The notes beneath the pieces are model-generated. The model was not told where the DNA came from and did not search any database. It saw only the letters and a program-made list of their open reading frames with translations. The translations under genes were made by a program, and so were the position numbers. From positions 62,001-126,000 of the IMG/VR virus record IMGVR_UViG_3300032268_000832: a DNA stretch of 64,000 nt; one strand, 5' to 3'. Numbering within the stretch: the first letter of the stretch is position 1; each line of letters starts with the position of its first letter. Below, piece after piece: positions 4,778 to 25,582 of the stretch.

Positions 4778-5572
4778 TTATACTTCATACGTTATTTTTC
4801 TATCATTAGCAAAATAATATTCTTTTTTAGCTGTTTGTAGCCACCATTTTGCTTCGGCTGGGTTCATAGTTTCTTTGTAACTAGAAAATAAAGATTTTGG
4901 TCTTTGATTTACGTGTTTATACCCAAATTTTGGTACTGTCATGATTCTAACATCTTTAAATGTTAATCTTAACAAGAATTCATAAATAAACGTTAATTTG
5001 ATACTAGGTTTAAGTTTACCCATATCTTCATAGGTTGATTTTCTAACCACCATTCCATCAATGTTAAAGTTTTGATAAGCTAACAAAGCGTTGTTATCTA
5101 AAACACCTAATTCATCTGAAAAACTATTAGCCCAAACAGCTTCGTTTGTAAAACCAATAAAACGACCTTCAGAATCAACATCGATAACAATTGGTAAGAA
5201 TAAATCTACATTAGGATGAGCTTCTCTGTATTCAACAGCGTTTTTAAACCAAATCTTAGCATATTCATCATCATACTCTAAGATAGAAATCCATTCTGAT
5301 TTAGCAGCAGCTACACCAAAGTTAATTTGTGAACAAAAATCTGTTTCACCGTCATTTTCGACAATAGTTACAATGTCTTTAATTTCACCAAAATCTAATT
5401 TTTTAACATATTTTGAAACATCGCTACCTTTAGGTGTAACAATGATAAGTTCATCAGGTCTAACAATTTGTAGTTCAACACTTTTAATTGCGTTAGATAA
5501 TGAATTTTTAGTCACGTCGTCTAATTCGTGAATTGGTAAAATTACCGAGATATCTGTTTTTTTATTTTCCAT
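4778..5572 (-). CDS. Glycosyltransferase family 2
   Basis: ISVILPIH start, N.GV..AKSEWISILEYDD (DxD-like). Confidence 0.8.
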   Translation of the reverse strand: MENKKTDISVILPIHELDDVTKNSLSNAIKSVELQIVRPDELIIVTPKGSDVSKYVKKLDFGEIKDIVTIVENDGETDFCSQINFGVAAAKSEWISILEYDDEYAKIWFKNAVEYREAHPNVDLFLPIVIDVDSEGRFIGFTNEAVWANSFSDELGVLDNNALLAYQNFNIDGMVVRKSTYEDMGKLKPSIKLTFIYEFLLRLTFKDVRIMTVPKFGYKHVNQRPKSLFSSYKETMNPAEAKWWLQTAKKEYYFANDRKITYEV

Positions 5573-5577
5573 TTTTA

Positions 5578-6726
5578 TTAAGCGTTTGTAGTTTCTTTTA
5601 GAGCGTCTTCAAATCTCTCTAAAGTTATTTTTAATTCTGAAGTTCTATTTTCAAAAATAGCCCCATATACATCAGTAATTGCTTGTTTTTGGTTTTCTAA
5701 AGTATAAAGACCTTTAGATTCAGCCATACCTTCTAATAAATCACTTGGCACCGCGTCTTCTAACCATATTTTTAAGTAAGTTGCAATTAATTCAGGTATG
5801 TTTAAAGTTGTGTTAGTCCAAACACCATTATTTTTTACTGAAACATCACCGTTTTCATCTACACTTTCTAACCACTCTGGAACCATATTAGGTATTTTTC
5901 CAATTACTGGTGTATTACATTCAATAGCTTCTAAAGGGAAGGTACCAAACCCAGCTTGGTCATCAATCCAAACAGCTAAACAACATTTTTCTAATTCTCT
6001 AGCGAATTTTTCTCTAGAAAAACCTCTTAATTCTTTAAAAGTAACCCATTTGTAAATAGGGAATTGTAAATAAAACGCTTTAGCTAATTTTGTTGCATCA
6101 CCAGCATTTCTAGTTAACAAAGCAACAACTGGTGTTTTAGGTTTATCTGAAGGTTTAAAATATTCAGGGATTGACACTGGAACAACGTGTGTCATAATTG
6201 AAGGGAAAAGAGATTTGATATAATCTGCTTGTTTTTTTGAAGTTGTAATAACATCATTAAATCCAAAATCAAAATCCCATTTTTTACCAATAGGTAAAAG
6301 TTCTAATAAATAATCATAACTTTGTGATAATACAATTTTTTTACATGGGAAGCTTTTTACTTGGTCCATAATATTCGCGAAGATTTCTGGGATTATAATA
6401 AAATCTGAAGGTGTAATCATTAGTTCTTGACCTTCAATAGATGCATGTGGTAATTGTGCGTATTCTTCGCCTAACCAATCTGCAACACCTTGCCCGTTTT
6501 CGTCACCTCTAAGTTTATAATCATTTTTTTCGTGTAAGATACTTGCGTTGTAACCTAATTCGTTAAGAATTTTTACATGTTCGTAAATGTTAGCAATACC
6601 TGCTGTTGGGTTACCTTTAGTATCCAACGTGAAAAAATACATTTTAAAATTTTTATTTTCTAAATTACCGATAATTTCTTTTAATTGAGAAATTTGGTTT
6701 TCAATTTGGTTTTTATTTTCTTCCAT
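5578..6726 (-). CDS. GT-B glycosyltransferase (GT4-like)
   Basis: AGIANIYEH N-terminal motif; GFGTFPLEAIECNTPVIG donor-binding motif. Confidence 0.75.
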   Translation of the reverse strand: MEENKNQIENQISQLKEIIGNLENKNFKMYFFTLDTKGNPTAGIANIYEHVKILNELGYNASILHEKNDYKLRGDENGQGVADWLGEEYAQLPHASIEGQELMITPSDFIIIPEIFANIMDQVKSFPCKKIVLSQSYDYLLELLPIGKKWDFDFGFNDVITTSKKQADYIKSLFPSIMTHVVPVSIPEYFKPSDKPKTPVVALLTRNAGDATKLAKAFYLQFPIYKWVTFKELRGFSREKFARELEKCCLAVWIDDQAGFGTFPLEAIECNTPVIGKIPNMVPEWLESVDENGDVSVKNNGVWTNTTLNIPELIATYLKIWLEDAVPSDLLEGMAESKGLYTLENQKQAITDVYGAIFENRTSELKITLERFEDALKETTNA

Positions 6727-6744
6727 TTTTTTTATTATTAATTA

Positions 6745-7116
6745 TTATTGTACCTCTACTAGTATTTCGTAGTGTATTAGTGTGTTAAAAGCTATTTTAT
6801 ATGAAATACTCATTTTATCTAAGGCTCTTTCAGAACCTAATTCTTCATCCATTTCATCTGTTTCATTTAAAACGATATCAATCATTTCTCTTAGTAGTTC
6901 GTACATTGTTTGTTGAATGTACATCTCTCTTTCTTTTTTTGTTGTTACAACTTCAGATGTAATTGTTTTACCCTTTTCATCTTTAATTTCTTTGGTTACC
7001 GATTCGGTAATGAAATTACCGTTTGGGTGGTCTATTTTAATAATTTCTGTGAACTTGTCCACGTCAAAATAATATACCGAACCACCAAAATCTAGCAGGT
7101 TATCATAGTTCTTCAT
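6745..7116 (-). CDS. Hypothetical protein
   Basis: 123 aa ORF overlapping upstream gene. Confidence 0.6.
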   Translation of the reverse strand: MKNYDNLLDFGGSVYYFDVDKFTEIIKIDHPNGNFITESVTKEIKDEKGKTITSEVVTTKKEREMYIQQTMYELLREMIDIVLNETDEMDEELGSERALDKMSISYKIAFNTLIHYEILVEVQ

Positions 7117-7732
7117 AAGTAGTGATTTTTGTGTTTAAAATTTTATTTCTTAAATCTTCATCGTTAATAAATTCTAAGATTGAATTTAGTTCATAATCAC
7201 CTTTTACATCATGATTATACGATGAATTAATTTTAACAGATATTTTACTGTTAGGTTTTTTTGAAAGCGAAATTGGGTTTGATGTGATTAAAACATCAGC
7301 GTCTCCCCATTCATCTTCATTGTCCTTAACAAATCTAATTTTATCAATTAAACATGCTGTTTTAGATAAAAAGAAAAAGGTTGATGGGATGCTTTTATCG
7401 ACTTCTCGACTTACTAATTCAATTTCATGTTCTTCATCATCTTTTATGTCTGATAAAAAACGATTAAAGTGAATCATCAACCCATCTGACATCAAATCAG
7501 CGTGACCAAAAATTTCTAGAGGTGCTTCTTTATAAAGAAACGTATTGAGTCTGTTGATGTCACCAAACTCAAAATGGTCTAATAAATTAAAACTGGTTAC
7601 ATCTTCAATTTCTACTTCTGAATATTTTTTACCTTCTTTTTCTAATTCTGGTACAATGTATTTTTCATAAGTATAAATGAATTGGCCAATATAATCTCGT
7701 AAAACCTCATTTATGCTAATAGCTATTTTCAT
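7103..7732 (-). CDS. HAD-fold 5'(3')-deoxyribonucleotidase-like protein with degenerate catalytic motif
   Basis: MKIAISINEVLRD matches NT5C-type IAIDxDxVL.D with both Asp replaced. Confidence 0.55.
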   Translation of the reverse strand: MKIAISINEVLRDYIGQFIYTYEKYIVPELEKEGKKYSEVEIEDVTSFNLLDHFEFGDINRLNTFLYKEAPLEIFGHADLMSDGLMIHFNRFLSDIKDDEEHEIELVSREVDKSIPSTFFFLSKTACLIDKIRFVKDNEDEWGDADVLITSNPISLSKKPNSKISVKINSSYNHDVKGDYELNSILEFINDEDLRNKILNTKITTYEEL

Positions 7733-7736
7733 AAAC

Positions 7737-7767
7737 GAAATTTACTGGCTAAATACCTATAAGTAAA
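7737..7767 (-). promoter_or_regulatory. Putative TTTAC-N18-TAnnTTTn promoter (near-leaderless)
   Basis: TTTAC 7767-7763, TAAATTTC 7744-7737, 4 nt before ATG 7732. Confidence 0.4.
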
Positions 7768-7781
7768 GTAAAAATAACTCT

Positions 7782-8663
7782 TTATTTAAAAAAATTAATA
7801 ATTTTTCTAATAAACGGCGAGCCACCCTCATTAATAACACTAGGTTGTGTTTTTATTACCTTATCAAGTTCAGGTACAAAATGTTGTTTCTTTTTATAGT
7901 TAGGATGTTCAAAAAGTCTTACGAAATACTTTGTAAGTCTGTGTCTAACAATTTCATCTTCAACAAATTCTACTATTGAAACACCTTCTTCTGGTAAATC
8001 TTTAATCATTTTAATTAGTTCACTTAAAGAACTATCTTCTTTCTTTTTAAGGTCTATTTGATTAGTATCACCTAATAAAACTATTCTAGTGTCTTCAGAA
8101 AAACGAGTAAGGAAAGTTTTAGCATTACCATCGTTTACGTTTTGAAATTCATCAAATAATAGAATGGTGTTGGCTAATGACCTACCTCTCAAAGAACCAA
8201 AAACTTCCATTTTAATATAACCAGCATCTAACATTTTATTTGTCAACTCTTCACCAATCAATTTGTAGAACGCGTCAAAAAATGACATCATGATAAATTT
8301 TAATTTATCACGCTCATCACCTGGCAACGTACCTAAATCTTCGTCTTTTAATTGAACTATTGATTTAACTAGTTTAATGTCGTGGTATTTATCTGGGTTT
8401 GTTTTAAGTAACAATAAAGCTTCAGCTACACTAAGAAGGGTTTTACCAGTACCAGCTGGGCCAATACAAACGGTTACATCACCATTTTTAATAGAATTAG
8501 TTAATTTCTTTTGAGTTTCGTTTTTGTGTTTTAAATCTATTTTAATTTGAGACAATAAATCTTGTTTAAGGTTAATTGTTGATTCTTTAGGTGAAACCGC
8601 TTTTTTAGCTCTAGTGGTTTTTGTGGTACCACTTTTTGGAGCTGGTGTAACTTTTCTAGTCAT
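7782..8663 (-). CDS. phoH: PhoH-family ATPase
   Basis: GPAGTGKT, LGTLPG, LRGRSL, DEFQN, GD..QID motifs. Confidence 0.9.
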   Translation of the reverse strand: MTRKVTPAPKSGTTKTTRAKKAVSPKESTINLKQDLLSQIKIDLKHKNETQKKLTNSIKNGDVTVCIGPAGTGKTLLSVAEALLLLKTNPDKYHDIKLVKSIVQLKDEDLGTLPGDERDKLKFIMMSFFDAFYKLIGEELTNKMLDAGYIKMEVFGSLRGRSLANTILLFDEFQNVNDGNAKTFLTRFSEDTRIVLLGDTNQIDLKKKEDSSLSELIKMIKDLPEEGVSIVEFVEDEIVRHRLTKYFVRLFEHPNYKKKQHFVPELDKVIKTQPSVINEGGSPFIRKIINFFK

Positions 8664-8687: not shown

Positions 8688-9623
8688 TTATTGTTTTATG
8701 TTAGGGTAGTTTTTTTCAAACCATTCAACTGTTTCTTTTATACCAACATCAAAAGGTGTAAATTTAAAATCTGGTAAATAACTCATTAACTTTGAGTTAT
8801 CACTAGGTTTTCTAAATTGTCCATCTGGTTTTGTTTTATCAAAAATAACATTACCTTTAAAATTCATAGCTTCTACGATAACACCAACAACATCTTTTAT
8901 TGAAATTTCTTCTGAAGTTGATAAAATGATTGGTTCTGATTCGTTATAATTTTCTAAAACCCATAAAGTTAATTCAGCGACATCTTTAGAATATATAAAC
9001 TCTCTAAGTGGTTGACCAGAACCCCAAATTTTTAAATCGGTACCGTTTTCTCTAGCCAAATAACATTTGTGAATCAAAGAAGGTATAACATGTCCGTTTT
9101 CAATGTCAAAATTGTCATTAGGACCATAAATATTTGTTGGTATTACCGAAGTATAGTTTAAACCATATTGTTCTCTATAAGCTCTTATTTGAACTTCTGA
9201 CATTCTTTTAGAATAAGCATACGCATCATTTGAATTGTGTGGTGGTCCTAAATGAATTTTAGATTCTGTTAATGGATATTCAATATCGTTAGGAAACACA
9301 CATGTCGATAAAAAGGCTACCAACTTTTTAACACCATATTTTCTAGCTGCTTCAATAACATTGGTATTAATCATGATGTTATCGTAAAAAAAATCACCTT
9401 TGTATTTCATGTTACCACCAACACCCCCAACTTTAGCCGCACAATGAATAATTTTATCAACAGCAAAATCTTTTTGTGTTTCTATATTAGTGTAAAAATT
9501 AAAAACGTCTTCAGTCTGTTTTTTATCTCTAAGGTCACAAACTTTAGATGTAATCGCAATTAAATCTCCTTTGAATTGTGAGCCAACTAATCCATTTGAA
9601 CCTGTTACTAATAATCTACCCAT
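8688..9623 (-). CDS. fcl: GDP-L-fucose synthase
   Basis: GSNGLVG, AAKVGG, LSTCVFP, YAYSK, PTNIYGPNDNF, HVIPSLI. Confidence 0.92.
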   Translation of the reverse strand: MGRLLVTGSNGLVGSQFKGDLIAITSKVCDLRDKKQTEDVFNFYTNIETQKDFAVDKIIHCAAKVGGVGGNMKYKGDFFYDNIMINTNVIEAARKYGVKKLVAFLSTCVFPNDIEYPLTESKIHLGPPHNSNDAYAYSKRMSEVQIRAYREQYGLNYTSVIPTNIYGPNDNFDIENGHVIPSLIHKCYLARENGTDLKIWGSGQPLREFIYSKDVAELTLWVLENYNESEPIILSTSEEISIKDVVGVIVEAMNFKGNVIFDKTKPDGQFRKPSDNSKLMSYLPDFKFTPFDVGIKETVEWFEKNYPNIKQ

Positions 9624-9625
9624 AA

Positions 9626-10606
9626 TTAACTTAATTTATTTAACCAATATTCTATCATTTCATCTAACATACTTTCGAAAGTATATTTAGGTTGCCAACC
9701 CAATTTAGTTTTAGCTTTAGTTGCGTCACCTCTTAGATAATGTAATTCTTCAGCTCTTTCAAATTTTTTATCTGATTTAACATATTTTTCAGAATCTAAT
9801 TCTAATTTATTAAAAACATACTCAACTAAATCTTTAACTTTATTTGACATACCAGTCGCTAATACATAATCATCTGGTTTTTCTTGTTGTAACATTAACC
9901 ACATACCTTCAACATAGTCTTTAGCGTGACCCCAATCTCTCATAGCATCTAGATTACCCAGCACAAGCTCATTAGAGAGCCCTAGTTTAATCTTTACCGC
10001 TTCAAGTACTACTTTGTTAGTCACAAAATTTATCCCTCTTCTAGGGCTCTCGTGGTTAAATAAGATACCAGAACTTATAAACATATTGTAAGAGTTTCTA
10101 TAGTTATGGCAAAGACTGTGAGCGTAAAGTTTACTACAACCGTATGGTGATACTGGAATCATTTTAGTGGTTTCTCTTTGGAAATAATCTTGGTCTGATT
10201 GGTTTCCGAACATCTCAGAAGTTGCAGCGTGATATACTTTAGAATTAGGTGAAAATTTTCTTACAGCTTCTAAAACAGCTAAGGTTCCACCAGAATTAAC
10301 ATCTAGCGTATACTTTGGTAATTCAAAACTAATTTGGACATGACTTTGCGCCGCCAAATGATAAATTTCATCTGGTTTTAATTCATTTATAATAGACTCA
10401 ACACTTATTGGGTCTGTTAAATCCATATAATGTAATGTTATTTGGTTTGAGTCTCTTAAATGCTGTATTCTAGTAGTTTGAGATTCTGGTACTGAATTTC
10501 TTCTAATAGTACCATGTACCACATACCCCTTTTCTATCAATAATTCAGCAAGATAAGAAGCGTCTTGTCCATTGGCACCCAATATTAAAGCTATTTTATT
10601 TTTCAT
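9626..10606 (-). CDS. gmd: GDP-mannose 4,6-dehydratase
   Basis: GANGQDASYLA, HLAAQSHV, TSEMFG, PVSPYGCSK, NHESPRRG, RDWGHAKDYV. Confidence 0.95.
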   Translation of the reverse strand: MKNKIALILGANGQDASYLAELLIEKGYVVHGTIRRNSVPESQTTRIQHLRDSNQITLHYMDLTDPISVESIINELKPDEIYHLAAQSHVQISFELPKYTLDVNSGGTLAVLEAVRKFSPNSKVYHAATSEMFGNQSDQDYFQRETTKMIPVSPYGCSKLYAHSLCHNYRNSYNMFISSGILFNHESPRRGINFVTNKVVLEAVKIKLGLSNELVLGNLDAMRDWGHAKDYVEGMWLMLQQEKPDDYVLATGMSNKVKDLVEYVFNKLELDSEKYVKSDKKFERAEELHYLRGDATKAKTKLGWQPKYTFESMLDEMIEYWLNKLS

Positions 10607-11199
10607 TATAAATATTTTTCTTTAAACGCTTCTATTGAAATTAAATTTATTGCCTTTTCTCTATTTTTTTCTAAAAAACTATAATCATAACAATTTTCAC
10701 CATCATTAATTTTTAATAATTCTTGAGAACCCTTTTTAATAATACCACAACCTTCATCAGTGTTTACGGTAAATATTTCCAATTCTGGGTTTTCCATTCT
10801 TAATTGTACAATAGCTTTCCACACATCACCATGCCATGCATCACTCGCGCGCTCTCTTCTTTGAGTTATTTCGGTAACTGGATTACAATCGTGTACAACA
10901 ATAACACCATTGTCATTTAAAAATTCTAAGGAATTTGTTATGTCTCTATAAACTTGTTCATGTAAATGTAACCCATCAACAAAAACAATATCATATTTTT
11001 GAGAAACATGTTTTTCAAAAAAGTCATCCGAGGTCATTTTGTAAGTTGTATCCACATTTGGGTCGACACCGTGTTTAGTTGGAACGTTAACACCAACCCA
11101 ATTATACCCAGGTTGTGCTGGTGTGTTTACACCAATCTCTAAATAAGAAGTGTATTTATTTTTTTCAATTAATCCGTTTATTATTTCTGTTCTTGTCAT
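10606..11199 (-). CDS. Class I SAM-dependent methyltransferase (Methyltransf_24-like)
   Basis: YLEIGV, YDIVFVDGLH, VVHDCNP. Confidence 0.8.
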   Translation of the reverse strand: MTRTEIINGLIEKNKYTSYLEIGVNTPAQPGYNWVGVNVPTKHGVDPNVDTTYKMTSDDFFEKHVSQKYDIVFVDGLHLHEQVYRDITNSLEFLNDNGVIVVHDCNPVTEITQRRERASDAWHGDVWKAIVQLRMENPELEIFTVNTDEGCGIIKKGSQELLKINDGENCYDYSFLEKNREKAINLISIEAFKEKYL

Positions 11200-12035: not shown

Positions 12036-12036
12036 A

Positions 12037-15249: not shown

Positions 15250-15252
15250 AAT

Positions 15253-16564: not shown

Positions 16565-16567
16565 AGA

Positions 16568-18037: not shown

Positions 18038-18039
18038 TT

Positions 18040-18783
18040 TTAAAACGCTTTAATTCTTTTATTTAAATAAGAACGATAATCTTCTTCTTGTTCTTTTTCA
18101 CTTATTAAATAATACAAACCGAAACCATGTTGTTTGTTAAAACTACTAAGACGTTCAGCTCTTATTTTTTGTTTGTATTTATGGTCTTCCATACCTAAAA
18201 ATTTATAATGAAGCATTTTTAAACCATTATGTTGATGAACAACAATATCACCTTCTGGTCTAGCGCTATGACAACCAAAATTATAATTGATGTTTGATAT
18301 TTTATTACAATCAAACATCATTGGTTTGTCTAGCACAGGTGTTCTAACACCTTCTTTAACTTTTTCAAGTAAATTTAATTCTGGTGAAACAATGAAATCT
18401 TCGTCTGCAACCATATGGTAACCTTCTGGTACAAAAAAAGTGATATTTTTTTCTTTTGATTCTTTTAAAAACTCAACCATGTTTTCATGATATAAAAATT
18501 CATCAGTATCACCTAAAATAACATAATCAGCAACACCAACGCTAGACTTCCAAACATGGTTTTTTAATTTAACATGTAACCCATCGTGAAACTCACCTTT
18601 TGAATCGAATGGGATTATATCTGTATTTGAAAAAGATTTAACTATTTCAACACTGTTATCTGTTGAATTGTTATCTAAAATAGTTACTTGTTCGCAAAAT
18701 GACAAATAATGTTTTAATAAATGTGGTAATATGTTAGCCTCGTTGTAACATAAGAAAAAAGCGTGTACTATAGGTTTTTTCAT
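18040..18783 (-). CDS. GT2-like glycosyltransferase (Glyco_tranf_2_4 type)
   Basis: YNEANILPHLLKHY, DNNSTD, GDTDEF, GCH, LHYK. Confidence 0.8.
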   Translation of the reverse strand: MKKPIVHAFFLCYNEANILPHLLKHYLSFCEQVTILDNNSTDNSVEIVKSFSNTDIIPFDSKGEFHDGLHVKLKNHVWKSSVGVADYVILGDTDEFLYHENMVEFLKESKEKNITFFVPEGYHMVADEDFIVSPELNLLEKVKEGVRTPVLDKPMMFDCNKISNINYNFGCHSARPEGDIVVHQHNGLKMLHYKFLGMEDHKYKQKIRAERLSSFNKQHGFGLYYLISEKEQEEDYRSYLNKRIKAF

Positions 18784-19727
18784 TTTTTTAATTTTTTTTC
18801 ATATTTTTTATCTAATTCTTCTACTTTATGTTGTTCTAAAATATCCTTACCATTTATAACAACATCAGATTTAAATTTAATAATATAAAAACCATTAAAC
18901 TCCACAATTTTATCAAATTTAATATTTTCATATCGATACAATAAAAAATCTTCAGAACCGATTGTTTTAAAAGTTAAAAATTCAACAGCTTCAAAATCTA
19001 AAAAAGTACTATGTTTACCGTTAATAACTTTTTTTATTGCTGATAAAAGTAAATTAGTTGTTTTGTTGTATTCGTCTGGGTAACTACTAATATAGAACTC
19101 CAACATTTTTTCTTTTTTATTTATTTTTCTAACATTTAATTTTTTTGTGTAATTTTCAATTAAAAAATTTGGGTAATCGATTCTTTCTATTTTTATAGGT
19201 CTATCACCTTTTTGTGTTGCCATGTGTTCTGTAGCACCTATAGTAGCATGGGAAACGCTGATTAAATTCCCATCATCATCATAATTTTCTAAAACACTAT
19301 CTAATATAGATAATTCTTCATTACCCATAACGTCAGTAGTGTTTAAAGCAATTTCTGTGTTGTCTAAAACCATTTCTAATTTATAATCATCGTAATCGTC
19401 AACTTTTATTTTTTTAAGACCTAATTTTGGATTTTTTTTCGTTGTTTTAACAATTGGCATCCCGTCTTCATCATAACCAATAATTGTCGATTTAACACCT
19501 TCAGTCGCTTTAAGGATTTTATATGTTCTCCATTTTAGATTTAAAACTTCTTGTGTAACAATATTATTTTTCAACGAATGTAAAAGTGTTCCAGTGTCTT
19601 TTTCACTAATAACATTTATATTCTCTTCTAATGAGTTTTTACTTGATAAAATATTTTTTTCTACACCATAAAAACTCATTAATAGCCCCACTATTTTATT
19701 TTTTACCCAATTTATCATATTAATCAT
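18780..19727 (-). CDS. Hypothetical protein
   Basis: 315 aa ORF overlapping both neighbours. Confidence 0.6.
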   Translation of the reverse strand: MINMINWVKNKIVGLLMSFYGVEKNILSSKNSLEENINVISEKDTGTLLHSLKNNIVTQEVLNLKWRTYKILKATEGVKSTIIGYDEDGMPIVKTTKKNPKLGLKKIKVDDYDDYKLEMVLDNTEIALNTTDVMGNEELSILDSVLENYDDDGNLISVSHATIGATEHMATQKGDRPIKIERIDYPNFLIENYTKKLNVRKINKKEKMLEFYISSYPDEYNKTTNLLLSAIKKVINGKHSTFLDFEAVEFLTFKTIGSEDFLLYRYENIKFDKIVEFNGFYIIKFKSDVVINGKDILEQHKVEELDKKYEKKLKK

Positions 19728-21753
19728 TAAATAATTTAATCCATTTATTTATTATTTCTTTGTTTGTTAAACTAGACACTTCATGGTCTGTATTTTCGTT
19801 ACCATAAAATACAGTATTTGTCATGAAACATTCGTCTTTAACTAAACAAGCAACTTCACTTTTAGACGAATGATATACACAACCAATCATGTCATACATA
19901 TCTTGCTTATTATTTAAGAACCCTTTTAAAATAACTTTATCACTCAATAATGGTTTTACCATATTCTCATAATAAACACCATAAGGTTCACCAAATAAAT
20001 AAACCTTATCACATCCGTCAGCTAATGCCCTTTCTATTGAAATATGGGTTTGTTTGTTATCATCAAATGAACCTATGATACCAGCAATTTTTTCTAAACC
20101 AGTTTTGTTTGATGGTTTTAATTCTGTTTTTAAATTAGGTATAATTTCATAAGCGTCATTATAACCACTATGATAATTTTTATGTTTTTCATTTAAAAAT
20201 ACAGCCACATCCCAAAATTTGTTTATATTAGAAACTTCATATAAGTTTTTTTCATGACAAGTAAGAATAACTATACCAGCATTAGGTCTTACTGGTGGTA
20301 CCATAAAATGCATTATCAACCTATCATTTTTATCAACAACAAAATTTTTACTGTCATATAATTCAGATTTACATTTATCTAAATGCCAAGTATGTGGTCC
20401 ATAAAATGTCGCATCATAACCAGATTCATTTAATAAATTTGTTAAATTTATTAACGCTTGTGTCGAACCGCCTTTATCTGACCAACCAGAAACTATTTTT
20501 ACTTTGTTACCGATTAATCTATTTTTTAATTTAAAAAAAGTTTGTTTTTTTAAATTATTAAAATTTTCATTACTTTTTAACGTTTCTATTAAATCGTCTT
20601 CAATTCCATATGTTTTAATTAAATTATCTTTTATAGAATCATTAATCGCTAAATATTTAAAAACATTTTTGTTTTTTATTGGTTCATCTGTGTTAAAATC
20701 GTTAGATGTGATTACGTTAACTACGTCAAAATCTGGGTACAAGTTAGTAAAATGTTCACTTATTTGTTTTTTAATTAGATATAAAAAATCAAAATTAACA
20801 TCTGCTATTTTATACAATGTTTTTTCCTTTGATACCATATCACCATTTTGAGTTTTAAGAACCCATTTCCCATCACCTAGCTTAAATGATGGTGGTTCTT
20901 CAAACGAATATAATTTAACCCCTAATTTTTTAAATTTATTAGCGTTGTTTATATTATAATTTGTTACTAGATGAATATCTGAATTATTTTTAAAACTTTT
21001 TATTATGTCAATAATATTTTTTTCATCATTTGGAGTCATGATAAAACCACTAACCATAATTTTAAGTCTCTGTCCTTGTCTAATAGTTTTTTTTATATTA
21101 GCTGGTAAATTATCTTTAAATTTTTCGGAGAAATTAACTCTGTTTTTTTCCCAAGCTTCGTTAGTCATCCCAATAGATTTGTGATTAACTCTTACTACAG
21201 TAGTAACACCAACCTTAACCCCTTCTATAAAGTTTTCAAACGCAAAAGTTACATCATAAAAATGAAACCCTTCTACATTTTCGTTAAATTGTTTTTTAAT
21301 TCTATTTTTATGTACTGCAAACCAAACACCATCAACAACAACAACTTCTTCTAAGTTTTGACCTAAATCATCACTATAAGTAGATAACCAAGTCTTTCCT
21401 TCGTGCGTGTGCGCGACTCTACCAAACATTTTAGACCTATTTTCCCACCATTGACCAGATACTGGCATGTTTTTACTACCAGCAACACCTATGATGCCAT
21501 ATTCTGGATTTTTACCAAACAATTTAACTAGTTTGTTACCCCATTGTTTAGTTTCCACCGTCAAATCGTCGTGACAGAATACTACTATATCGTATTTCGC
21601 TTGTTTTAAGCCACGATTATACGCGTGAGTTAATGATTCACCATTATTAATGATTTCTATCACCTCGACGTGTTTATGTAAGCCAGAAGACTTAATTAAG
21701 TGTTCTTTATGTTCTGGGTTTGTTTCTCTTGTACAATATACTATACTTACCAT
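19720..21753 (-). CDS. Multidomain glycosyltransferase (GT2-like plus GT-B-like domains)
   Basis: N-term YNRGL...VVFCHDD...VDGVW...FHFYD; C-term GWSDKGGSTQAL...SKSEVA GT-B pattern. Confidence 0.75.
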   Translation of the reverse strand: MVSIVYCTRETNPEHKEHLIKSSGLHKHVEVIEIINNGESLTHAYNRGLKQAKYDIVVFCHDDLTVETKQWGNKLVKLFGKNPEYGIIGVAGSKNMPVSGQWWENRSKMFGRVAHTHEGKTWLSTYSDDLGQNLEEVVVVDGVWFAVHKNRIKKQFNENVEGFHFYDVTFAFENFIEGVKVGVTTVVRVNHKSIGMTNEAWEKNRVNFSEKFKDNLPANIKKTIRQGQRLKIMVSGFIMTPNDEKNIIDIIKSFKNNSDIHLVTNYNINNANKFKKLGVKLYSFEEPPSFKLGDGKWVLKTQNGDMVSKEKTLYKIADVNFDFLYLIKKQISEHFTNLYPDFDVVNVITSNDFNTDEPIKNKNVFKYLAINDSIKDNLIKTYGIEDDLIETLKSNENFNNLKKQTFFKLKNRLIGNKVKIVSGWSDKGGSTQALINLTNLLNESGYDATFYGPHTWHLDKCKSELYDSKNFVVDKNDRLIMHFMVPPVRPNAGIVILTCHEKNLYEVSNINKFWDVAVFLNEKHKNYHSGYNDAYEIIPNLKTELKPSNKTGLEKIAGIIGSFDDNKQTHISIERALADGCDKVYLFGEPYGVYYENMVKPLLSDKVILKGFLNNKQDMYDMIGCVYHSSKSEVACLVKDECFMTNTVFYGNENTDHEVSSLTNKEIINKWIKLFND

Positions 21754-21756: not shown

Positions 21757-22752
21757 TTATTTATTAAAACGATTATAAGCGTTGTCGCTTATTTTTATTG
21801 TATCAGCTTTCCCAATAAATTGAGCTAGGGTTTTAGTATTAGAATAACTCATCGCTGAACGAAGATAATCTTCAAAATTATTAACCCATTGTTTTAGGTT
21901 ATATTCAACCTTTCTAAATCTAACAACACCTTCAGACGTTGTTAATTCTTTTTTACCCCATTTTTTTTGAACTTCTTTGGTACTCATACCTCTGAATTTC
22001 TTATATACAGTAATTTTATTTTTATAACATAAATTAGCAATTCTTTGTGGTATCCATATTTTTTTGAACAAATAGTTTTCACCACAAGAATCGATAGCTT
22101 TGTTAAAAAGACTACCAACCATAACAAAGTTAGCACCTAACGCCAATGCTTTTATAACATCTGAATAATTTTGCATACCACCATCTGCTACAATATACGC
22201 TGCATCATCATATGTTTTAGCTATATCATAACATTCTTTAATCAAAGACGCCATAGGGTAACCAACACCAGTATGTACTGTTGTACTACAACCACCACCA
22301 TTTCCGATACCAATCCTAACAAAATCAGCGCCAGCTAAGGATAATTTTTCATAGGTTTTAGGGTTAGCAACATTACCAACCATTAAAATCAAATTAGGAT
22401 AATTCTCTTTTGTTTTTTTAACAGTTTCTAAAAGCTTACCCATATGACCATTTGCAATATCAATTAAATAAAAACCAGTTTGATTTAATTCTTTTTTATC
22501 AAACAATTCATCAAATTCAGATAATGAAAAAGACATAAAACCAGTTGTGTTTTTTTCACCTCTAGGTGAACATGTGATAATTTTTAACCCATCATATAGT
22601 TTTTCATTATTTTCATCGATAACAGAATCCATTGGTGCTGTTATTAGTGGTAAATAACCATTAATAAACGGTTCTACTTCTTTTCTACTATCTATTTTAG
22701 ATGTTATAGAAGGTTTGATTAAAATATCGTTAAAATCGAATTTTGTTGCCAT
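21757..22752 (-). CDS. guaC: GMP reductase-like (IMPDH/GMPR family, no CBS domains)
   Basis: FDFNDILIKP, APMDSV, DIANGH, GNVA, GIGNGGGCST, ADGG, FRGMS, SEG, LRSAMSY; no IMPDH RY flap dyad seen. Confidence 0.7.
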   Translation of the reverse strand: MATKFDFNDILIKPSITSKIDSRKEVEPFINGYLPLITAPMDSVIDENNEKLYDGLKIITCSPRGEKNTTGFMSFSLSEFDELFDKKELNQTGFYLIDIANGHMGKLLETVKKTKENYPNLILMVGNVANPKTYEKLSLAGADFVRIGIGNGGGCSTTVHTGVGYPMASLIKECYDIAKTYDDAAYIVADGGMQNYSDVIKALALGANFVMVGSLFNKAIDSCGENYLFKKIWIPQRIANLCYKNKITVYKKFRGMSTKEVQKKWGKKELTTSEGVVRFRKVEYNLKQWVNNFEDYLRSAMSYSNTKTLAQFIGKADTIKISDNAYNRFNK

Positions 22753-22753
22753 A

Positions 22754-23329
22754 TTATTTTATACCTGTACTACCAAAACCACCAGAATTTCTTTCAGTGT
22801 TTTCATTTATTTCTTTAACTGTATTTAAAGTTAACACATTTTTACCAATAACTGAAGCGATAACACCTTGTGCTATTCTATCTCCATTTTCAACATAAAA
22901 TTCATTTAAACCATGGTTGATTAGGATTACTTTAATTTCACCTCTGTAATCAGCATCTACAGTTCCTGGGGAATTCAAAACACAAACTTGATTCTTAGCA
23001 GCTAAACCACTTCTACTTCTAACTTGAATTTCAAACCCTTCTGGTAATTCAAAATATAAACCAGTTGGTATGATAGCGAAACCTCCTTGTGGTGACAACT
23101 TAATAGTTTCTGTTAAATTAGCTCTAAGGTCAAACCCAGAAGACCCAGATGTTGCATATTCTGGGTCTGGGTTTGTTGATTCGTTTTTAAAATTAACATT
23201 AAATTTAAAAGGGTTTTCATTTGTTAAATTTTTTTGAGAAAACTCTGAATTAAAATCTTCTTCAGTGTATGGGTCATTAGGGTCAATCATCCTAAGAACT
23301 TTTTCACGCATGTATTCTATATTAAACAT
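22754..23329 (-). CDS. dut: Trimeric dUTPase
   Basis: GFDL, RSGLA, GTVDADYRGE, RIAQ, RNSGGFGSTG; start moved to ATG 23329. Confidence 0.93.
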   Translation of the reverse strand: MFNIEYMREKVLRMIDPNDPYTEEDFNSEFSQKNLTNENPFKFNVNFKNESTNPDPEYATSGSSGFDLRANLTETIKLSPQGGFAIIPTGLYFELPEGFEIQVRSRSGLAAKNQVCVLNSPGTVDADYRGEIKVILINHGLNEFYVENGDRIAQGVIASVIGKNVLTLNTVKEINENTERNSGGFGSTGIK

Positions 23330-23330
23330 A

Positions 23331-23891
23331 TTATTCAGATTTTTCGTGTTTAATTGCAAAAATGTTAGCCATTTTTAATAATTCACCAAGAGTGGTGTTA
23401 TGATATTGTGCCATTTGGTCATCAGTTTTATCAAACATTAAAATAGCAGCGTATTCTTCATCTGTAAACTTAACACCGTTAGATAACGCATAGTAAATAC
23501 TTCTTTCACTAACACGCATTGAAACTAAGTTATTATTAAAGTCATACATTTTACCTTGGTTTTTTCGGTGCCATTCTGAATCACATGGTACGTATAAATT
23601 TGCCTTACCAATTTGGTGAAGTAAACAAATTTTAAGTAATGATGCTTGGTTTACTTGTTTATCCTCAGGTAACGCATTATTAAAACGGACAGCGTAAAAC
23701 GCGACTCTAAGTAAATGGTCAACAAGACCACCTTCAAAGGCATTATGTAAGCTGTCCATTGTAGATGCTGGGGCTTTTATGAAAGATTCACCCAAAAATT
23801 TCATGAGTTCATCTGTCATGAACTCATACTTTGTTGCTGTTTCAAAATATTTTTTAGTATTAGAAACAATTTTTTCTTGTGTTAAAGACAT
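23331..23891 (-). CDS. HD-superfamily (YhaM-like) protein with HD changed to HQ
   Basis: APAS...HNAFEGGLVDHLLRV...LLHQIGK. Confidence 0.7.
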   Translation of the reverse strand: MSLTQEKIVSNTKKYFETATKYEFMTDELMKFLGESFIKAPASTMDSLHNAFEGGLVDHLLRVAFYAVRFNNALPEDKQVNQASLLKICLLHQIGKANLYVPCDSEWHRKNQGKMYDFNNNLVSMRVSERSIYYALSNGVKFTDEEYAAILMFDKTDDQMAQYHNTTLGELLKMANIFAIKHEKSE

Positions 23892-23925
23892 TGATTTTAT
23901 ATTAAATAATTGTTATTCGTTTTTA

Positions 23926-23956
23926 CAAATATACGCATAAAAAACATAAAAATCAA
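23926..23956 (-). promoter_or_regulatory. Bacteroidota sigmaA-type promoter TTG-N20-TATATTTG
   Basis: Consensus match upstream of HD-dut-guaC-GT operon. Confidence 0.65.
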
Positions 23957-23981
23957 TGTTTTTTTTAAAATATTTATTTAA

Positions 23982-24344
23982 TTAAGACCTTGTCATACCA
24001 GATGTGACAGTATCCCCATCCTCTTCTAATTTATCTTGTTTTAATGTTTTTTGGATAAAAGATTCTCTTAGTTCTTCAATTTCTTTTTTATAGTCTTTAG
24101 CTTGAGTATTTAAAGCGTGCTTAACAACAGCGTTTTCATGACCTTTGATTTCAATTTTATCCATAATATTTTTAATTCTGGATGGGTCAAAAGAACCAAA
24201 GTTTGTTGTTTTTTGTTTTGGCTCTTCAAACAATAAAGGTCTATTTGATTTTACTTCTGAAATTTTAATATCTTCTTTTTCCTCATCTTTTAACATTTCA
24301 ATCATGAAATTTAAAAGCATTTTTACATCATCTTTTCTAGACAT
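23982..24344 (-). CDS. Hypothetical protein
   Basis: 120 aa ORF. Confidence 0.55.
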   Translation of the reverse strand: MSRKDDVKMLLNFMIEMLKDEEKEDIKISEVKSNRPLLFEEPKQKTTNFGSFDPSRIKNIMDKIEIKGHENAVVKHALNTQAKDYKKEIEELRESFIQKTLKQDKLEEDGDTVTSGMTRS

Positions 24345-25582
24345 AGTTCTGATTTTTTATTTTTTGTTAATTGTAAATATAATTCTCTTCTTTGTCCAGT
24401 AACACTTTCCATTGAATAAACATCTTTTACAGTATTGTATAAGTTTTCTTGTAAAACAGAAATCATATCTGGGTTTTGAATAAGTTTTTTAAGTGAAGAA
24501 TACCAGTCTTTGTGGTTTTTTCTAGTTTCAATAAGAATACCGTTGGCTGTTTTATCAAATTCACCACCAAACTTAATCGCGTTGGTTAAATCTAATTTAT
24601 AAGGTCCAAAATCTTGTGCAATAATTGCTTTATGGTGAAAACCAGCTTCAATTACTTTTAATTGACTTTTAACTTTATTAAAAACATTTTCTTCTAATGG
24701 TGCCAAAGAAATATCAAACAAATTATAGTTTGAAGCGTAAGTTGAAATTGGTTTTGTCCAAACTCTTCTATATGGTTCGTTAGCGATATTTGGGAATTCA
24801 TCCTGTGTAAATCTCATTAAAAAGTTTTTATATTCTGGACTAACAATATTGTAATTATCAGTAAAGATTTTTTCATAACGATACCAAACGCTTTCCATAG
24901 GTGTTATTGCTCTAACTTTTTGTTCACCAGTATTTGTGTCAATATCAGTATGTGTACCTCTAGTATCAAAACCACACAATACAAATTGTACTTTATCGAT
25001 AAGGTTATCACTTTTTAATTTTGAAACAACACCACTAAGAATTTCTAAATCTTTTAAGTGAGAAGAACCACCTAACCATCCAATTCTAATTCTATCAGAT
25101 TTTTCTAAATTGGGTGTAAATTGTTTTTCTTTTGGGTCAACAGCGTTAGGGATTACAAATACATTTTTATTGTATTTTTTAATCTCATCAGCAAATAACG
25201 GTGTTGTTGTCGTTACATTTCTAGCAACTTTAATATTATCTAATATTTTTTTATCTAGACCAGCTGATTTAATAATATGATAAGCTGGGTGGTGAGTACC
25301 TGGAGCCCAATAATCATCCAAATCCATAATACTAATAATCCCTAGACTATCTAATTTATCTAACAATTGAGGCATTGTTTCATAAGACCCTAATGTTCTA
25401 TGGTAATGAATAACATCATATTGTTTTAACCATTCATCATCATTTAATTGTGGTTCATAATCGATATCGATTGAAAATTCATCTGAATATAATGTTTCTA
25501 ATGCGATGTGTGGATTTGTAGAACGAAAATAACCAACCCCAGTTCTATCTGAGGGTACTACTAAAACTTTAATTTTTTTCAT
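24323..25582 (-). CDS. GT-B glycosyltransferase (GT4-like)
   Basis: GVGYFR, DLDDYW, IPNAVD, IGWLGGSSH..DL, DISLAPL..N.FN..KS.LKVIEAG. Confidence 0.85.
   Translation of the reverse strand: MKKIKVLVVPSDRTGVGYFRSTNPHIALETLYSDEFSIDIDYEPQLNDDEWLKQYDVIHYHRTLGSYETMPQLLDKLDSLGIISIMDLDDYWAPGTHHPAYHIIKSAGLDKKILDNIKVARNVTTTTPLFADEIKKYNKNVFVIPNAVDPKEKQFTPNLEKSDRIRIGWLGGSSHLKDLEILSGVVSKLKSDNLIDKVQFVLCGFDTRGTHTDIDTNTGEQKVRAITPMESVWYRYEKIFTDNYNIVSPEYKNFLMRFTQDEFPNIANEPYRRVWTKPISTYASNYNLFDISLAPLEENVFNKVKSQLKVIEAGFHHKAIIAQDFGPYKLDLTNAIKFGGEFDKTANGILIETRKNHKDWYSSLKKLIQNPDMISVLQENLYNTVKDVYSMESVTGQRRELYLQLTKNKKSELCLEKMM

What the first reader, a model, noticed from the sequence alone, without database searches (positions are those of the whole stretch)
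4778..25582. ~21 kb soluble glycan-assembly island with no membrane or export components
Seen: about 13 GT-like ORFs (GT2-type, GT4-type, two GT11, GT17, DUF5672), gmd+fcl and two methyltransferases, tightly coupled by overlapping stops and starts. I see no multi-pass membrane protein, flippase, polymerase, oligosaccharyltransferase or undecaprenyl-P priming enzyme. Established: serotype-conversion and O-antigen loci need such membrane parts. Inference: the acceptor is cytoplasmic (assembling virion proteins, or DNA) and is built by sequential sugar transfer. The gmd-to-18783 block looks like a swappable glycotype module inside a core of GT2/GT4 genes.
Basis: partly seen in the sequence, partly recalled or inferred. 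Interest (0 to 1): 0.78.

Follow-up and report, generated by a model that had tools for sequence, protein, structure and literature searches.

The report
Swappable sugar-coat gene cassette in jumbo phage
A freshwater jumbo phage carries about 13 soluble sugar-adding enzyme genes, and the middle ten are exchanged wholesale between otherwise near-identical strains, much as bacteria swap O-antigen genes, but what the sugars are attached to is still unknown.

Summary
Window 4778-25582 has 25 co-oriented, tightly packed ORFs. Nine match Pfam GT or DUF5672 families, two are GT-B/GT4-like, and two more are possible GT-A proteins. There are also GMD, GDP-fucose synthase and two methyltransferases. Eight ORFs have no recognisable glycan role (PhoH, GMP reductase, dUTPase, HD, four unknowns). 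No island ORF has a TM-like segment. The 306-kb record has no priming transferase, Wzx or Wzy.

The main new result is on the "swappable module". Two IMG/VR contigs that are 97-100% identical in the flanks lose all similarity across window ~11.1-21.6 kb. There they carry other glycan genes (GT25, GT10, FkbM, UDP-galactopyranose mutase). Across 114 related loci the block holds 221 protein families, and none of 564 distinct proteins has three or more TM-like segments. A frame of B419, GT677, A382 and GT2a is conserved.

The acceptor remains inferred. A cytoplasmic phage-made target, probably virion protein, is favoured. Host envelope remodelling through host carriers is not excluded. DNA is unlikely.

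The genome shows traits of the recently named "moraphages". GT-rich hypervariable islands are already reported in pelagimyophages and cyanomyophages, so this is a new variant of a known kind.

The parts
24323..25582 (-). B419: core GT-B/GT4-like glycosyltransferase at the left edge of the conserved frame
   Evidence: phrog_7162 'glycosyltransferase' at E 4e-42. Atlas neighbours are viral Glycos_transf_1 clusters. More than 200 relatives in IMG/VR. Homologues at 25% identity in phi92/rV5-like coliphages.
23982..24344 (-). u120: small unknown ORF, replaced by a divergent 149-aa ORF in near-identical strains
   Evidence: 45-58% nt identity here while both flanks are 97-99% identical.
21757..23891 (-). 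Nucleotide-metabolism trio (HD, dUTPase, GMP-reductase-like) inside the frame; no recognisable glycan role
   Evidence: Pfam. Present downstream of B419 in 35, 52 and 18 of 58 loci.
19720..21753 (-). GT677: two-fold glycosyltransferase. It has an N-terminal GT-A domain and a GT-B part. Residues 1-392 are conserved and residues 418-677 are variable.
   Evidence: Pfam GT2_5. AF2 model pLDDT 80; Foldseek matches majastridin (TM 0.64 normalised to the target), PimA and BshA. The C-terminal part is a separate 260-aa ORF in some relatives, and most relatives are 548 aa. Present in 58 of 58 loci. The left recombination gradient lies in its 5' part.
18780..19727 (-). u315: non-GT protein that always travels with the cassette. 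Its position inside the block varies and its alleles are divergent.
   Evidence: Present in all 7 fully covered intervals. AF2 model pLDDT 72 with no GT fold; only weak tail-tube/Hcp-like matches. 79% identical in L013, where the flanks are 98-100%.
11196..18783 (-). Fully replaceable cassette of 10 genes, listed from window 18783 down to 11196: GT2_4, GT2c, GT11b, GT2b, DUF5672, FkbM methyltransferase, u329 (GT-A-like), GT11a, u234, GT17
   Evidence: Pfam. No similarity in L013 or L093 although the flanks are 97-100% identical. Each gene is found in only 0-17 of 58 loci downstream of B419 and 0-6 of 26 loci upstream of A382. GC is 26-28% against 29-30% in the flanks.
8688..11199 (-). GDP-L-fucose supply (gmd, fcl) plus Methyltransf_24. 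Kept between near-identical strains but accessory across the clade. The right breakpoint lies at about 10.9-11.3 kb.
   Evidence: Pfam, PDB. 98-100% identical in L093 up to about 10,910. gmd in 12, fcl in 5 and MT24 in 4 of 26 loci.
6745..8663 (-). PhoH and two unknown core ORFs (u209, u123) in the right part of the frame
   Evidence: PhoH Pfam E 2e-49. All three are present in 26 of 26 loci. u209 and u123 have no Pfam or PHROG match.
4778..6726 (-). A382 (core GT-B/GT4-like) and GT2a (core GT2) at the right edge of the frame
   Evidence: PDB 8xsg at E 1e-6, Atlas, sub-threshold PF00534. GT2a matches Pfam PF00535. Found in 83 and 81 of the fetched loci.
4040..4768 (-). Sigma-70 region-2-like ORF directly downstream on the same strand; context only
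   Evidence: Pfam Sigma70_r2 at E 2e-4, below the cut-off. Conserved in 75 loci.

Best explanation
This is a virus-encoded glycan-synthesis locus built like a bacterial O-antigen locus but lacking all membrane steps.

Architecture. A conserved frame flanks a hypervariable block of about 8-12 genes. The frame holds B419 (GT-B), the bifunctional GT677 (GT-A plus GT-B), A382 (GT-B) and GT2a. The block holds glycosyltransferases, sugar methyltransferases and sugar-nucleotide enzymes. In this genome the block encodes GDP-fucose synthesis, two GT11-type putative fucosyltransferases, GT2, GT17 and DUF5672 enzymes, and an FkbM methyltransferase.

How it varies. Homologous recombination in the conserved edges replaces the whole block. 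The edges are the 5' part of GT677 with a patch in u315 on one side, and MT24/gmd on the other. Near-identical phages therefore make different glycans.

How it works (inferred). The soluble enzymes add sugars one after another in the infected cell's cytoplasm to a phage-made acceptor. The core transferases probably start or anchor the chain, and the cassette enzymes finish it. The most likely acceptor is one or more virion surface proteins. That would give strain-specific 'glycotypes' of the particle, as in chloroviruses, mimiviruses and some mycobacteriophages.

Shown versus inferred. Gene content, the absence of membrane parts and cassette swapping are shown. Sequential cytoplasmic assembly and the virion acceptor are inferred. 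I put about 0.9 on the architecture and swapping, and about 0.45 on the virion-protein acceptor. The confidence given for this field is for the whole statement, acceptor included.
For: Gene content.

No TM-like segment in any island ORF, and no Bac_transf, Glycos_transf_4, Polysacc_synt or Wzy_C in the 306-kb record.

Clade-wide absence: of 564 distinct block proteins from 114 loci, 544 have 0, 19 have 1 and 1 has 2 TM-like segments; none has 3 or more. O-antigen and capsule loci normally keep their glycan-specific flippase, polymerase or transporter inside the variable region (established knowledge). Dozens of different cassettes without one argue against export of the product as a lipid-linked unit.

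Swapping:
- L013 is 97-100% nt identical over window 25522-21620, apart from the replaced u120 stretch (24322-23820). It is unrelated beyond about 20,475, apart from an 84-86% patch at 19497-18898.
- L093 is 98-100% identical over 1-10,910 and unrelated beyond about 11,300.
- The replacement blocks hold GT25 x2, GT10 and FkbM (L013), and UDP-galactopyranose mutase and a 40%-identical GT17 (L093).
- Eight relatives' blocks hold GT2, GT10, GT11, GT25, GT47, NodZ, DegT, FdtA, Epimerase_2, hexapeptide transferases and more.
- The pan-cassette has 221 families from 724 proteins, 100 of them singletons.
- Family sharing falls to a mean Jaccard of 0.16 at 80-90% B419 identity.
- L055 and L075 share cassette genes at 66-84% identity although their backbone genes are 42-57% identical.

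Viral gene pool: the Atlas neighbours of B419, A382 and u329 are viral clusters, and those of u329 are mainly Nucleocytoviricota. GT11b is only 42-50% identical to its best matches in 301 sampled genomes of the class of a Flavobacteriales MAG. gmd is at most 61% identical to cellular homologues.

Persistence in nature: this exact cassette occurs in lake and freshwater metagenomes from 14 studies. In one of them it reaches about 300x word depth with 0-1 differences over 5.9 kb.
Against: No direct evidence identifies any acceptor.
- The enzyme families present (GT11, GT25, WavE, DegT, FdtA, Glf) are those of LPS and capsule loci. Their bacterial members act on undecaprenyl-linked acceptors while being soluble themselves.
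- The host, probably Bacteroidota, would have the carrier, flippases and ligases.
- The nearest recognised structural gene (tail sheath, 50551-53406) is 25 kb away. The immediate flanks have no PHROG or Pfam identity, so there is no mycobacteriophage-style adjacency to capsid or tail-tube genes.
- The record is only 86% complete, so a membrane component could lie in the missing part.
- My TM test is a simple hydropathy scan, not a trained predictor.
- The complex prediction for GT677 with u315 gave no answer.
Confidence: 0.45

Rival explanations
1. Host-envelope remodelling. The phage enzymes act at the inner face of the host membrane on host undecaprenyl-phosphate-linked intermediates, which the host primes, flips and ligates. 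This changes the infected cell's LPS, capsule or O-glycoprotein glycans. The result could block superinfection or stop progeny sticking to debris, as proposed for cyanomyophage and pelagimyophage GT islands.
For: The families are typical of LPS, O-antigen and capsule loci (GT11, GT25, WavE, DegT, FdtA, Glf, gmd/fcl). Such bacterial GTs are soluble or peripheral (established knowledge), so the lack of TM segments does not exclude this. The authors of PMC7029224 favour this reading for a similar hypervariable GT island. GT11b homologues occur in 87 of 301 sampled genomes of the class of a Flavobacteriales MAG.
Against: None of 564 distinct cassette proteins in 114 loci is a multi-pass membrane protein, and the record has no priming transferase, Wzx or Wzy. 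Wholesale change of the glycan without a matching flippase, polymerase or ligase would have to be tolerated by every host. Four or five core GTs are conserved across backbones as low as about 54% identical, which fits a phage-constant acceptor better. The nearest relatives of several enzymes are viral, not host. No sign of lysogeny was looked for or seen, and the benefit to a lytic jumbo phage is less obvious (inference).
Confidence: 0.28
2. DNA hypermodification. Some or all of the transferases build a glycan on a modified base of the phage DNA to evade restriction. Cassette diversity would then be driven by defence systems that recognise glycosylated DNA.
For: B419 sits next to the HD, dUTPase and GMP-reductase genes. 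The GT17 protein has a sub-threshold match to T4 beta-glucosyltransferase (E 0.0055, 16.9 bits against a cut-off of 27). Phage GT-A and GT-B enzymes are known to put up to three hexoses on 5hmC (bioRxiv 10.1101/2023.12.21.572611).
Against: No Tet_JBP match in the record. The only thymidylate-synthase homologue scores E 6e-83 and keeps the canonical motifs, including the Asn that specifies uracil (the motif reading is from my own knowledge of E. coli ThyA). Ten or more transferases plus fucosyl- and methyl-transferases far exceed any DNA glycan described in that study.
Confidence: 0.07
3. Another cytoplasmic or membrane-face acceptor. Examples are a small molecule or lipid (some GT-B matches are PimA and BshA), a non-virion phage protein, or host cytoplasmic proteins modified for takeover.
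For: The GT-B part of GT677 resembles PimA (a phosphatidylinositol mannosyltransferase) and BshA (a malate glycosyltransferase). u315 is a non-GT protein that always accompanies the cassette and could be a dedicated carrier or acceptor.
Against: Fold similarity among GT-B enzymes says little about the acceptor. A 10-gene, strain-variable pathway is hard to explain for an intracellular small-molecule product that nothing outside the cell sees (inference).
Confidence: 0.12

Closest known systems
Bacterial O-antigen and capsule loci (Wzx/Wzy- or ABC-transporter-dependent)
   Same: Sugar-nucleotide genes sit beside a run of GT2, GT4, GT11 and GT25 transferases and modifying enzymes. GC is lower than in the flanks. 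A hypervariable centre lies between conserved flanks and is exchanged by recombination in the flanks. The pan-gene pool is very large.
   Different: There is no initiating phosphoglycosyl transferase, flippase, polymerase, chain-length regulator, ABC transporter or ligase, either here or in any of 114 related loci. The locus is in a lytic-looking jumbo phage genome.
Chlorovirus (PBCV-1) capsid glycosylation machinery and the clade-specific glycosylation gene clusters of Megavirinae
   Same: Virus-encoded soluble and multi-domain glycosyltransferases. The virus has its own GMD and GDP-fucose synthase. Sugar methyltransferases are present. Glycan gene sets differ between strains or clades. GT677 matches multi-domain GTs of giant viruses at fold level, and u329's nearest Atlas clusters are mainly Nucleocytoviricota.
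   Different: This is a tailed bacteriophage, not a giant eukaryotic virus. No glycan or acceptor has been observed. Here the variable genes form one discrete recombining cassette.
Hypervariable 'host recognition cluster' with glycosyltransferases in pelagimyophages and cyanomyophages (PMC7029224)
   Same: Large aquatic myophages with a non-syntenic island rich in LPS-type glycosyltransferases and sugar-nucleotide genes. Function is unresolved.
   Different: That island lies in the structural module and is mixed with tail-fibre genes in T4-like genomes. Here the block is a pure glycan cassette in a frame of core GTs and nucleotide-metabolism genes. The fibre-like repeat protein (28456-30243) lies outside the island.
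Mycobacteriophage virion O-glycosylation (Freeman et al. 2023, PMC10527164, as cited in PMC12619734)
   Same: Phage-encoded soluble glycosyltransferases that decorate virion proteins in the cytoplasm. There is a weak fold match of GT677 to a Che8 glycosyltransferase.
   Different: Those phages have one to a few GT genes next to capsid and tail-tube genes. Here about 13 GT-like genes lie away from recognised structural genes, and the acceptor is unknown.
Moraphages (PMC12619734)
   Same: Freshwater jumbo phages up to 307 kb with predicted Bacteroidota hosts. They have an Hc1 histone-like protein, DnaJ and PolB, and four core orthogroups annotated as glycosyltransferases. This record has all of these traits.
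   Different: In the sections I read, the paper reports the four core GT groups but no variable cassette. Phylogenetic membership of this record was not tested, and some relatives found here reach 362-368 kb.
Serotype-converting prophage modules (gtrABC and O-acetylases) and T-even DNA glucosylation
   Same: Phage-encoded sugar transfer.
   Different: gtr modules need membrane GtrA, GtrB and GtrC, and none is present here. T-even-type systems need a hydroxymethyl-pyrimidine pathway and use one or two GTs; no such pathway was found.

Membership tests
Wzx/Wzy- or ABC-dependent O-antigen/capsule locus | Initiating polyprenyl-phosphate sugar transferase (Bac_transf or Glycos_transf_4) | tested here: not met
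   No match at E <= 0.1 in the six-frame search of the 306-kb record; the controls matched in 10-13 of 14 genomes.
Wzx/Wzy- or ABC-dependent O-antigen/capsule locus | Glycan-specific flippase, polymerase or transporter (multi-pass membrane proteins) within or beside the variable region | tested here: not met
   No Polysacc_synt or Wzy_C match. No island ORF has a TM-like segment. 0 of 564 block proteins in 114 loci have three or more TM-like segments. The hydropathy scan is crude, and ABC2_membrane was not searched by family.
Wzx/Wzy- or ABC-dependent O-antigen/capsule locus | Hypervariable GT and sugar-nucleotide centre between conserved flanks, exchanged by recombination | tested here: met
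gtrABC-type serotype conversion | Membrane GtrA flippase, GtrB bactoprenol glucosyltransferase and a multi-pass GtrC | tested here: not met
   There is no multi-pass membrane protein in the island. The multi-TM proteins elsewhere match other families or none. The GtrA Pfam family itself was not searched.
Phage DNA glycosylation (T-even type, or 5mYOX/ThyS-linked clusters) | Pathway that makes 5-hydroxymethyl-pyrimidine (a dCMP/dUMP hydroxymethylase, or C5-MT plus TET/JBP) | tested here: not met
   No Tet_JBP match. The single Thymidylat_synt homologue scores E 6e-83 and keeps canonical TS motifs. C5-methyltransferase was not searched. 14% of the genome may be missing.
Phage DNA glycosylation (T-even type, or 5mYOX/ThyS-linked clusters) | A GT with the T4 alpha/beta-glucosyltransferase fold and a DNA-binding groove | tested here: inconclusive
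   Only a sub-threshold T4-Gluco-transf hit (16.9 bits against a cut-off of 27) on the GT17 protein. B419 and A382 were not modelled.
Virus-encoded cytoplasmic protein glycosylation (chlorovirus type) | Virus-encoded soluble GTs plus the virus's own GDP-fucose pathway and sugar methyltransferase | tested here: met
Virus-encoded cytoplasmic protein glycosylation (chlorovirus type) | Glycan demonstrated on a capsid or virion protein | not testable with these tools
   No isolate, proteome or glycan data exist for this clade. tblastn of B419 and A382 against 50,697 phage records found only distant or no relatives.
Mycobacteriophage-type virion glycosylation | GT genes adjacent to the capsid and tail-tube genes whose products are glycosylated | tested here: not met
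   The flanking ORFs have no structural annotation. The nearest recognised structural gene is the tail sheath at 50551-53406.
Moraphage lineage (PMC12619734) | Freshwater jumbo genome of 200-307 kb with Hc1 histone-like protein, DnaJ, PolB and four core GT orthogroups | tested here: met
   306,463 bp. Hc1 at E 1e-20 and DnaJ at E 1e-24. PolB. Four conserved GTs. Lake and freshwater runs hold it.
Moraphage lineage (PMC12619734) | Placement inside the moraphage clade in MCP, TerL and PolB trees | not tested
   The published genomes were not available to the tools, so no tree was built.

The most novel reading that the evidence does not exclude
Jumbo phage particles carry complex, strain-specific glycans containing fucose and methyl sugars. 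These glycans are assembled entirely in the cytoplasm by a virus-encoded pathway and are diversified by O-antigen-style cassette exchange within a phage-only gene pool of hundreds of enzyme families. In other words, phages have serotypes of their own, which implies strong diversifying selection on the virion surface. The always-present non-GT protein u315 could be the dedicated acceptor or adaptor.
Probability: 0.35. Interest if true: 0.8.

Novelty: new variant of a known kind. Interest (0 to 1): 0.62.

Why it matters
Virus-encoded glycosylation without cellular membrane machinery is established for giant algal and amoebal viruses and for a few mycobacteriophages. GT-rich variable islands have been noted in marine myophages without resolution of what they do.

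This locus offers a clean, delimited case:
- a conserved frame of four transferases
- a roughly 10-kb cassette with nucleotide-level breakpoints
- natural near-isogenic strains that differ only in the cassette and two other small loci
- hundreds of metagenomic relatives

That makes the open question directly testable: is the target the virion, the host envelope or the DNA?

If the target is the virion, phage particles would have exchangeable glycotypes. That bears on adsorption, grazing and decay of viruses in lakes, and on lectin- or antibody-based detection. The pan-cassette would also be a large reservoir of soluble glycosyltransferases that need no lipid carrier, which is useful for glyco-engineering.

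Tried and rejected
- Megablast of the cassette against 50,697 phage records found nothing. PolB is only about 25% identical to Salinibacter and Nostoc phage enzymes. No cultured relative is available to consult.
- PHROG and Pfam scans of the flanking ORFs on both sides gave nothing usable, so the expression class and any structural neighbourhood could not be read from annotation.
- u315: the AF2 model has no significant PDB match (best E 0.04, TM below 0.2). The AFDB gave one uncharacterised relative and weak tail-tube-like hits. I do not call it a tail protein.
- Complex prediction of GT677 with u315 returned 'no answer', which is evidence neither way.
- Host or donor inference from gmd: the best cellular matches are 50-61% identical and spread over many phyla, which is uninformative.
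- GT11b in 301 genomes of the class of a Flavobacteriales MAG: best identity 42-50%, so no recent capture is visible.
- Expression: one freshwater metatranscriptome run holds a single 256-nt contig identical to 15863-16118. The tool itself warns that DNA can be present in such libraries, so I do not count it as proof of transcription.
- The multi-TM proteins elsewhere in the genome were checked as possible hidden flippases or polymerases. They are an ABC permease, a bestrophin, a Band_7 protein and an ABC_membrane_3 protein, or they have at most 4 hydrophobic segments with long acidic or low-complexity tails. I rejected them as Wzx/Wzy-like.
- u473 (2204-3625) homologues show three hydrophobic stretches in relatives. 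The window copy has one, and the protein otherwise looks soluble, so I did not treat it as glycan machinery.
- The short-sided 'joints' in the read-laying output (sides of 20-29 letters) were disregarded as repeat or other-organism artefacts, as the tool warns.

Full report
**What the window is.** The window is bases 62,001-126,000 of a 306,463-bp linear IMG/VR virus record that CheckV rates 86% complete. GC is about 30%. The record encodes a family-B DNA polymerase, a helicase, a tail protein and a tail sheath, so it is a tailed jumbo phage. No near DNA match exists among 50,697 deposited phage genomes, and PolB is only about 25% identical to the closest cultured phages. The exact cassette sequence occurs in lake and freshwater metagenomes from 14 studies.

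The record also carries an Hc1 histone-like gene and a DnaJ gene. Among the 14 control genomes, Hc1 matched only in Bacteroides. These traits, the size and the four conserved glycosyltransferases match the description of the recently named 'moraphages', freshwater jumbo phages predicted to infect Bacteroidota (PMC12619734). I did not test phylogenetic membership.

**Checking the observation.** All 25 ORFs between 4778 and 25582 lie on the minus strand. About ten junctions overlap, and most other gaps are under 25 nt.

Pfam confirms these matches:
- GT2 three times, GT2_4, and GT2_5 in a 677-aa protein
- GT17
- GT11 twice, one of them weak
- DUF5672
- GMD, Methyltransf_24 and FkbM

The gene next to gmd is GDP-L-fucose synthase, with E 2e-99 to solved structures. 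They are GT-B/GT4-like by a PDB match, by phrog_7162, by their Atlas neighbours and by a sub-threshold PF00534 hit. ORF 13643-14632 has GT-A-like viral neighbours, many from giant viruses. ORF 12037-12741 matches nothing.

So 'about 13 GT-like ORFs' is fair: nine pass a Pfam threshold (eight GT families plus DUF5672), two are well supported, and two are possible. These are PhoH, a GMP-reductase-like gene, dUTPase, an HD protein and four unknowns. Five of the six PF00535 matches in the whole record fall in this 21 kb, so the clustering is not chance.

**Membrane parts.** No island ORF reaches a Kyte-Doolittle mean of 1.6 over 19 residues; the maximum is 1.52. Six-frame family searches of the whole record found no Bac_transf, Glycos_transf_4, Polysacc_synt or Wzy_C, while the control genomes matched. 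The few multi-TM proteins elsewhere are an ABC permease, a bestrophin, a Band_7 protein, an ABC_membrane_3 protein and unknowns with at most four hydrophobic segments.

**The swappable module.** I used the two outer GT-B genes as anchors and fetched 160 related loci from IMG/VR, from contigs up to 368 kb. Merging overlapping loci showed one conserved order: u203, B419, (u120), HD, dUTPase, (GMP reductase), GT677, then a variable block, then PhoH, u209, u123, A382, GT2a and a sigma-like gene.

Presence of each gene across loci that cover its expected position:

| Gene(s) | Present |
|---|---|
| GT677 | 58 of 58 |
| PhoH, u209, u123 | 26 of 26 each |
| gmd | 12 of 26 |
| fcl | 5 of 26 |
| MT24 | 4 of 26 |
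| Each of the ten cassette genes | 0-17 of 58 (downstream of B419) and 0-6 of 26 (upstream of A382) |

The strongest evidence comes from two near-identical strains:
- L013 is 97-100% identical at the nucleotide level from window 25522 down to about 21,620, apart from the replaced u120 stretch (24322-23820). Identity then decays through the 5' part of GT677 (86, 72, 62, 52%) and becomes unrelated. An 84-86% patch returns at 19497-18898, in the C-terminal half of u315. All similarity ends at about 18,782.
- L093 is 98-100% identical from window 1 to about 10,910, falls to 80% and then 66%, and is unrelated beyond about 11,300.

In place of the window's genes, L013 carries two GT25 genes, a GT10 fucosyltransferase and a different FkbM gene. 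L093 carries UDP-galactopyranose mutase and a GT17 that is only 40% identical.

However, a mosaic zone extends to about 21.6 kb, and the right breakpoint lies inside the MT24 gene rather than at gmd. In two lake metagenomes that also hold the window's arrangement, contigs match up to position 18784 and then continue with unlike sequence. Word depth also rises over 18755-18951. This fits co-existing strains that share the u315 patch but differ next to it.

**Scale of the diversity.**
- Eight relatives' blocks match 36 Pfam families, including GT2, GT10, GT11, GT25, GT47, NodZ, WavE, DegT aminotransferases, FdtA, UDP-GlcNAc 2-epimerase, hexapeptide transferases, nucleotidyltransferase and several methyltransferases.
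- Across 114 loci, 724 block proteins fall into 221 families at 35% identity or more. One hundred of these are singletons.
- Sharing of families collapses as the backbone diverges. The mean Jaccard index is 0.16 at 80-90% B419 identity, and 53% of such pairs share nothing.
- Conversely, L055 and L075 share cassette genes at 66-84% identity although their backbone genes are 42-57% identical. Cassettes therefore also move between distant backbones.
- None of the 564 distinct block proteins has three or more TM-like segments.

**Core components.** The GT677 model (pLDDT 80) has an N-terminal GT-A domain. Its best matches are majastridin, polypeptide GalNAc-transferases, and chondroitin and heparosan polymerases. 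It also has a GT-B part that resembles PimA and BshA. In the viral structure library GT677 resembles multi-domain transferases of uncultured tailed phages and of giant viruses. Residues 1-392 are conserved. The C-terminal 260 residues are a separate gene in some relatives, and most relatives have a 548-aa form.

u315 is not a glycosyltransferase by fold, and no significant structural match was found. It is nonetheless present in every fully covered interval, sits at different positions within the block, and has divergent alleles that travel with the cassette. Its role is open.

**What the glycan is attached to.** Nothing here shows the acceptor.

For a cytoplasmic phage-made acceptor:
- Dozens of different cassettes consistently lack a flippase, polymerase, transporter or priming enzyme. 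Bacterial surface-glycan loci keep such genes inside the variable region because they are glycan-specific (established knowledge).
- A core set of transferases is conserved across very divergent backbones.
- Several enzymes have viral rather than bacterial nearest relatives.
- The gene set (own GMD and GDP-fucose synthase, methyltransferases, multi-domain GTs) parallels the chlorovirus and mimivirus systems (my own knowledge).

For host-envelope remodelling:
- The enzyme families are those of LPS and capsule synthesis, where the transferases are themselves soluble.
- The authors of a comparable island in pelagimyophages favour this reading (PMC7029224).

For DNA, there is only gene neighbourhood and one sub-threshold match. 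The record lacks TET/JBP, and its thymidylate synthase looks canonical. The DNA glycans described so far reach three hexoses.

I therefore rank the options as virion or other phage protein about 0.45, host envelope about 0.28, other acceptors about 0.12, and DNA about 0.07.

**Novelty.** Hypervariable GT-rich islands in aquatic myophages, and virus-encoded glycosylation clusters that differ between clades, are both known. The moraphage paper lists four core GT orthogroups. What I did not find in the papers I read is the following combination: a discrete O-antigen-like cassette, nucleotide-level recombination breakpoints between near-isogenic phage strains, a conserved transferase frame, a pan-cassette of more than 200 families, and no membrane component anywhere. 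I rate it a new variant of a known kind, with moderate to high interest. The main reason is that it makes the long-standing question of what these phage glycosyltransferase islands act on experimentally tractable.

Noticed in passing
window 28456-30243 (+), repeats at 29232-29982: This 595-aa protein has about 12 tandem 42-nt (14-aa) repeats and four stretches matching phrog_25468. In L011 it is only 68% identical although its neighbours are 100% identical. It is a second strain-variable locus and looks like a fibre or adhesin. The same strain background also carries the alternative u120 allele seen in L013.
   Followed up: partly
window 23982-24344 (-): The small ORF u120 is replaced by a divergent 149-aa ORF in L011 and L013, while the flanks stay 97-99% identical. 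This is a third micro-variable spot.
   Followed up: partly
window 18780-19727 (-): u315 is a non-GT protein that is always inside the variable block but at different positions. It has no significant fold match, only weak tail-tube/Hcp-like hits for residues 177-292. It could be an acceptor or adaptor.
   Followed up: partly
G000 37253-38569 (+), outside the window: The thymidylate synthase homologue is 438 aa. It has canonical motifs but about 120 extra residues relative to the Pfam model.
   Followed up: no
G000 248630-249409, 254172-255077, 197560-198498 and 279241-280083, outside the window: The phage encodes an ABC-transporter permease (BPD_transp_1), a bacterial bestrophin, an SPFH/Band_7 protein and an ABC_membrane_3 protein. 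These are unusual membrane-protein cargo for a phage.
   Followed up: no
G000 229835-231232 (-) and 271230-272132 (+), outside the window: The first is a 465-aa protein with a signal-peptide-like start, a long Ser/Thr/Asn-rich linker and a beta-rich C-terminus. The second is a 300-aa protein with two hydrophobic segments and a Ser/Gly/Cys repeat tail.
   Followed up: no
G000 185502-185666 (+) and 191670-191846 (+), outside the window: An Hc1 histone H1-like gene and a DnaJ gene, both reported as traits of moraphages. Among the 14 control genomes Hc1 matched only in Bacteroides thetaiotaomicron.
   Followed up: yes
G000 23257-23961 (+), outside the window: A lone GT2 gene (E 7e-22) lies next to a metallophosphoesterase and a nucleotidyltransferase-like gene, far from the island.
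   Followed up: partly
window 8688-9623 (-): The phage GDP-fucose synthase scores much higher against the human enzyme (E 2e-99) than against the E. coli enzyme (E 2e-53).
   Followed up: no
window 2204-3625 (-): The core ORF u473 has one strongly hydrophobic stretch (residues 365-383). Its homologues in relatives show three. It has no family match.
   Followed up: partly
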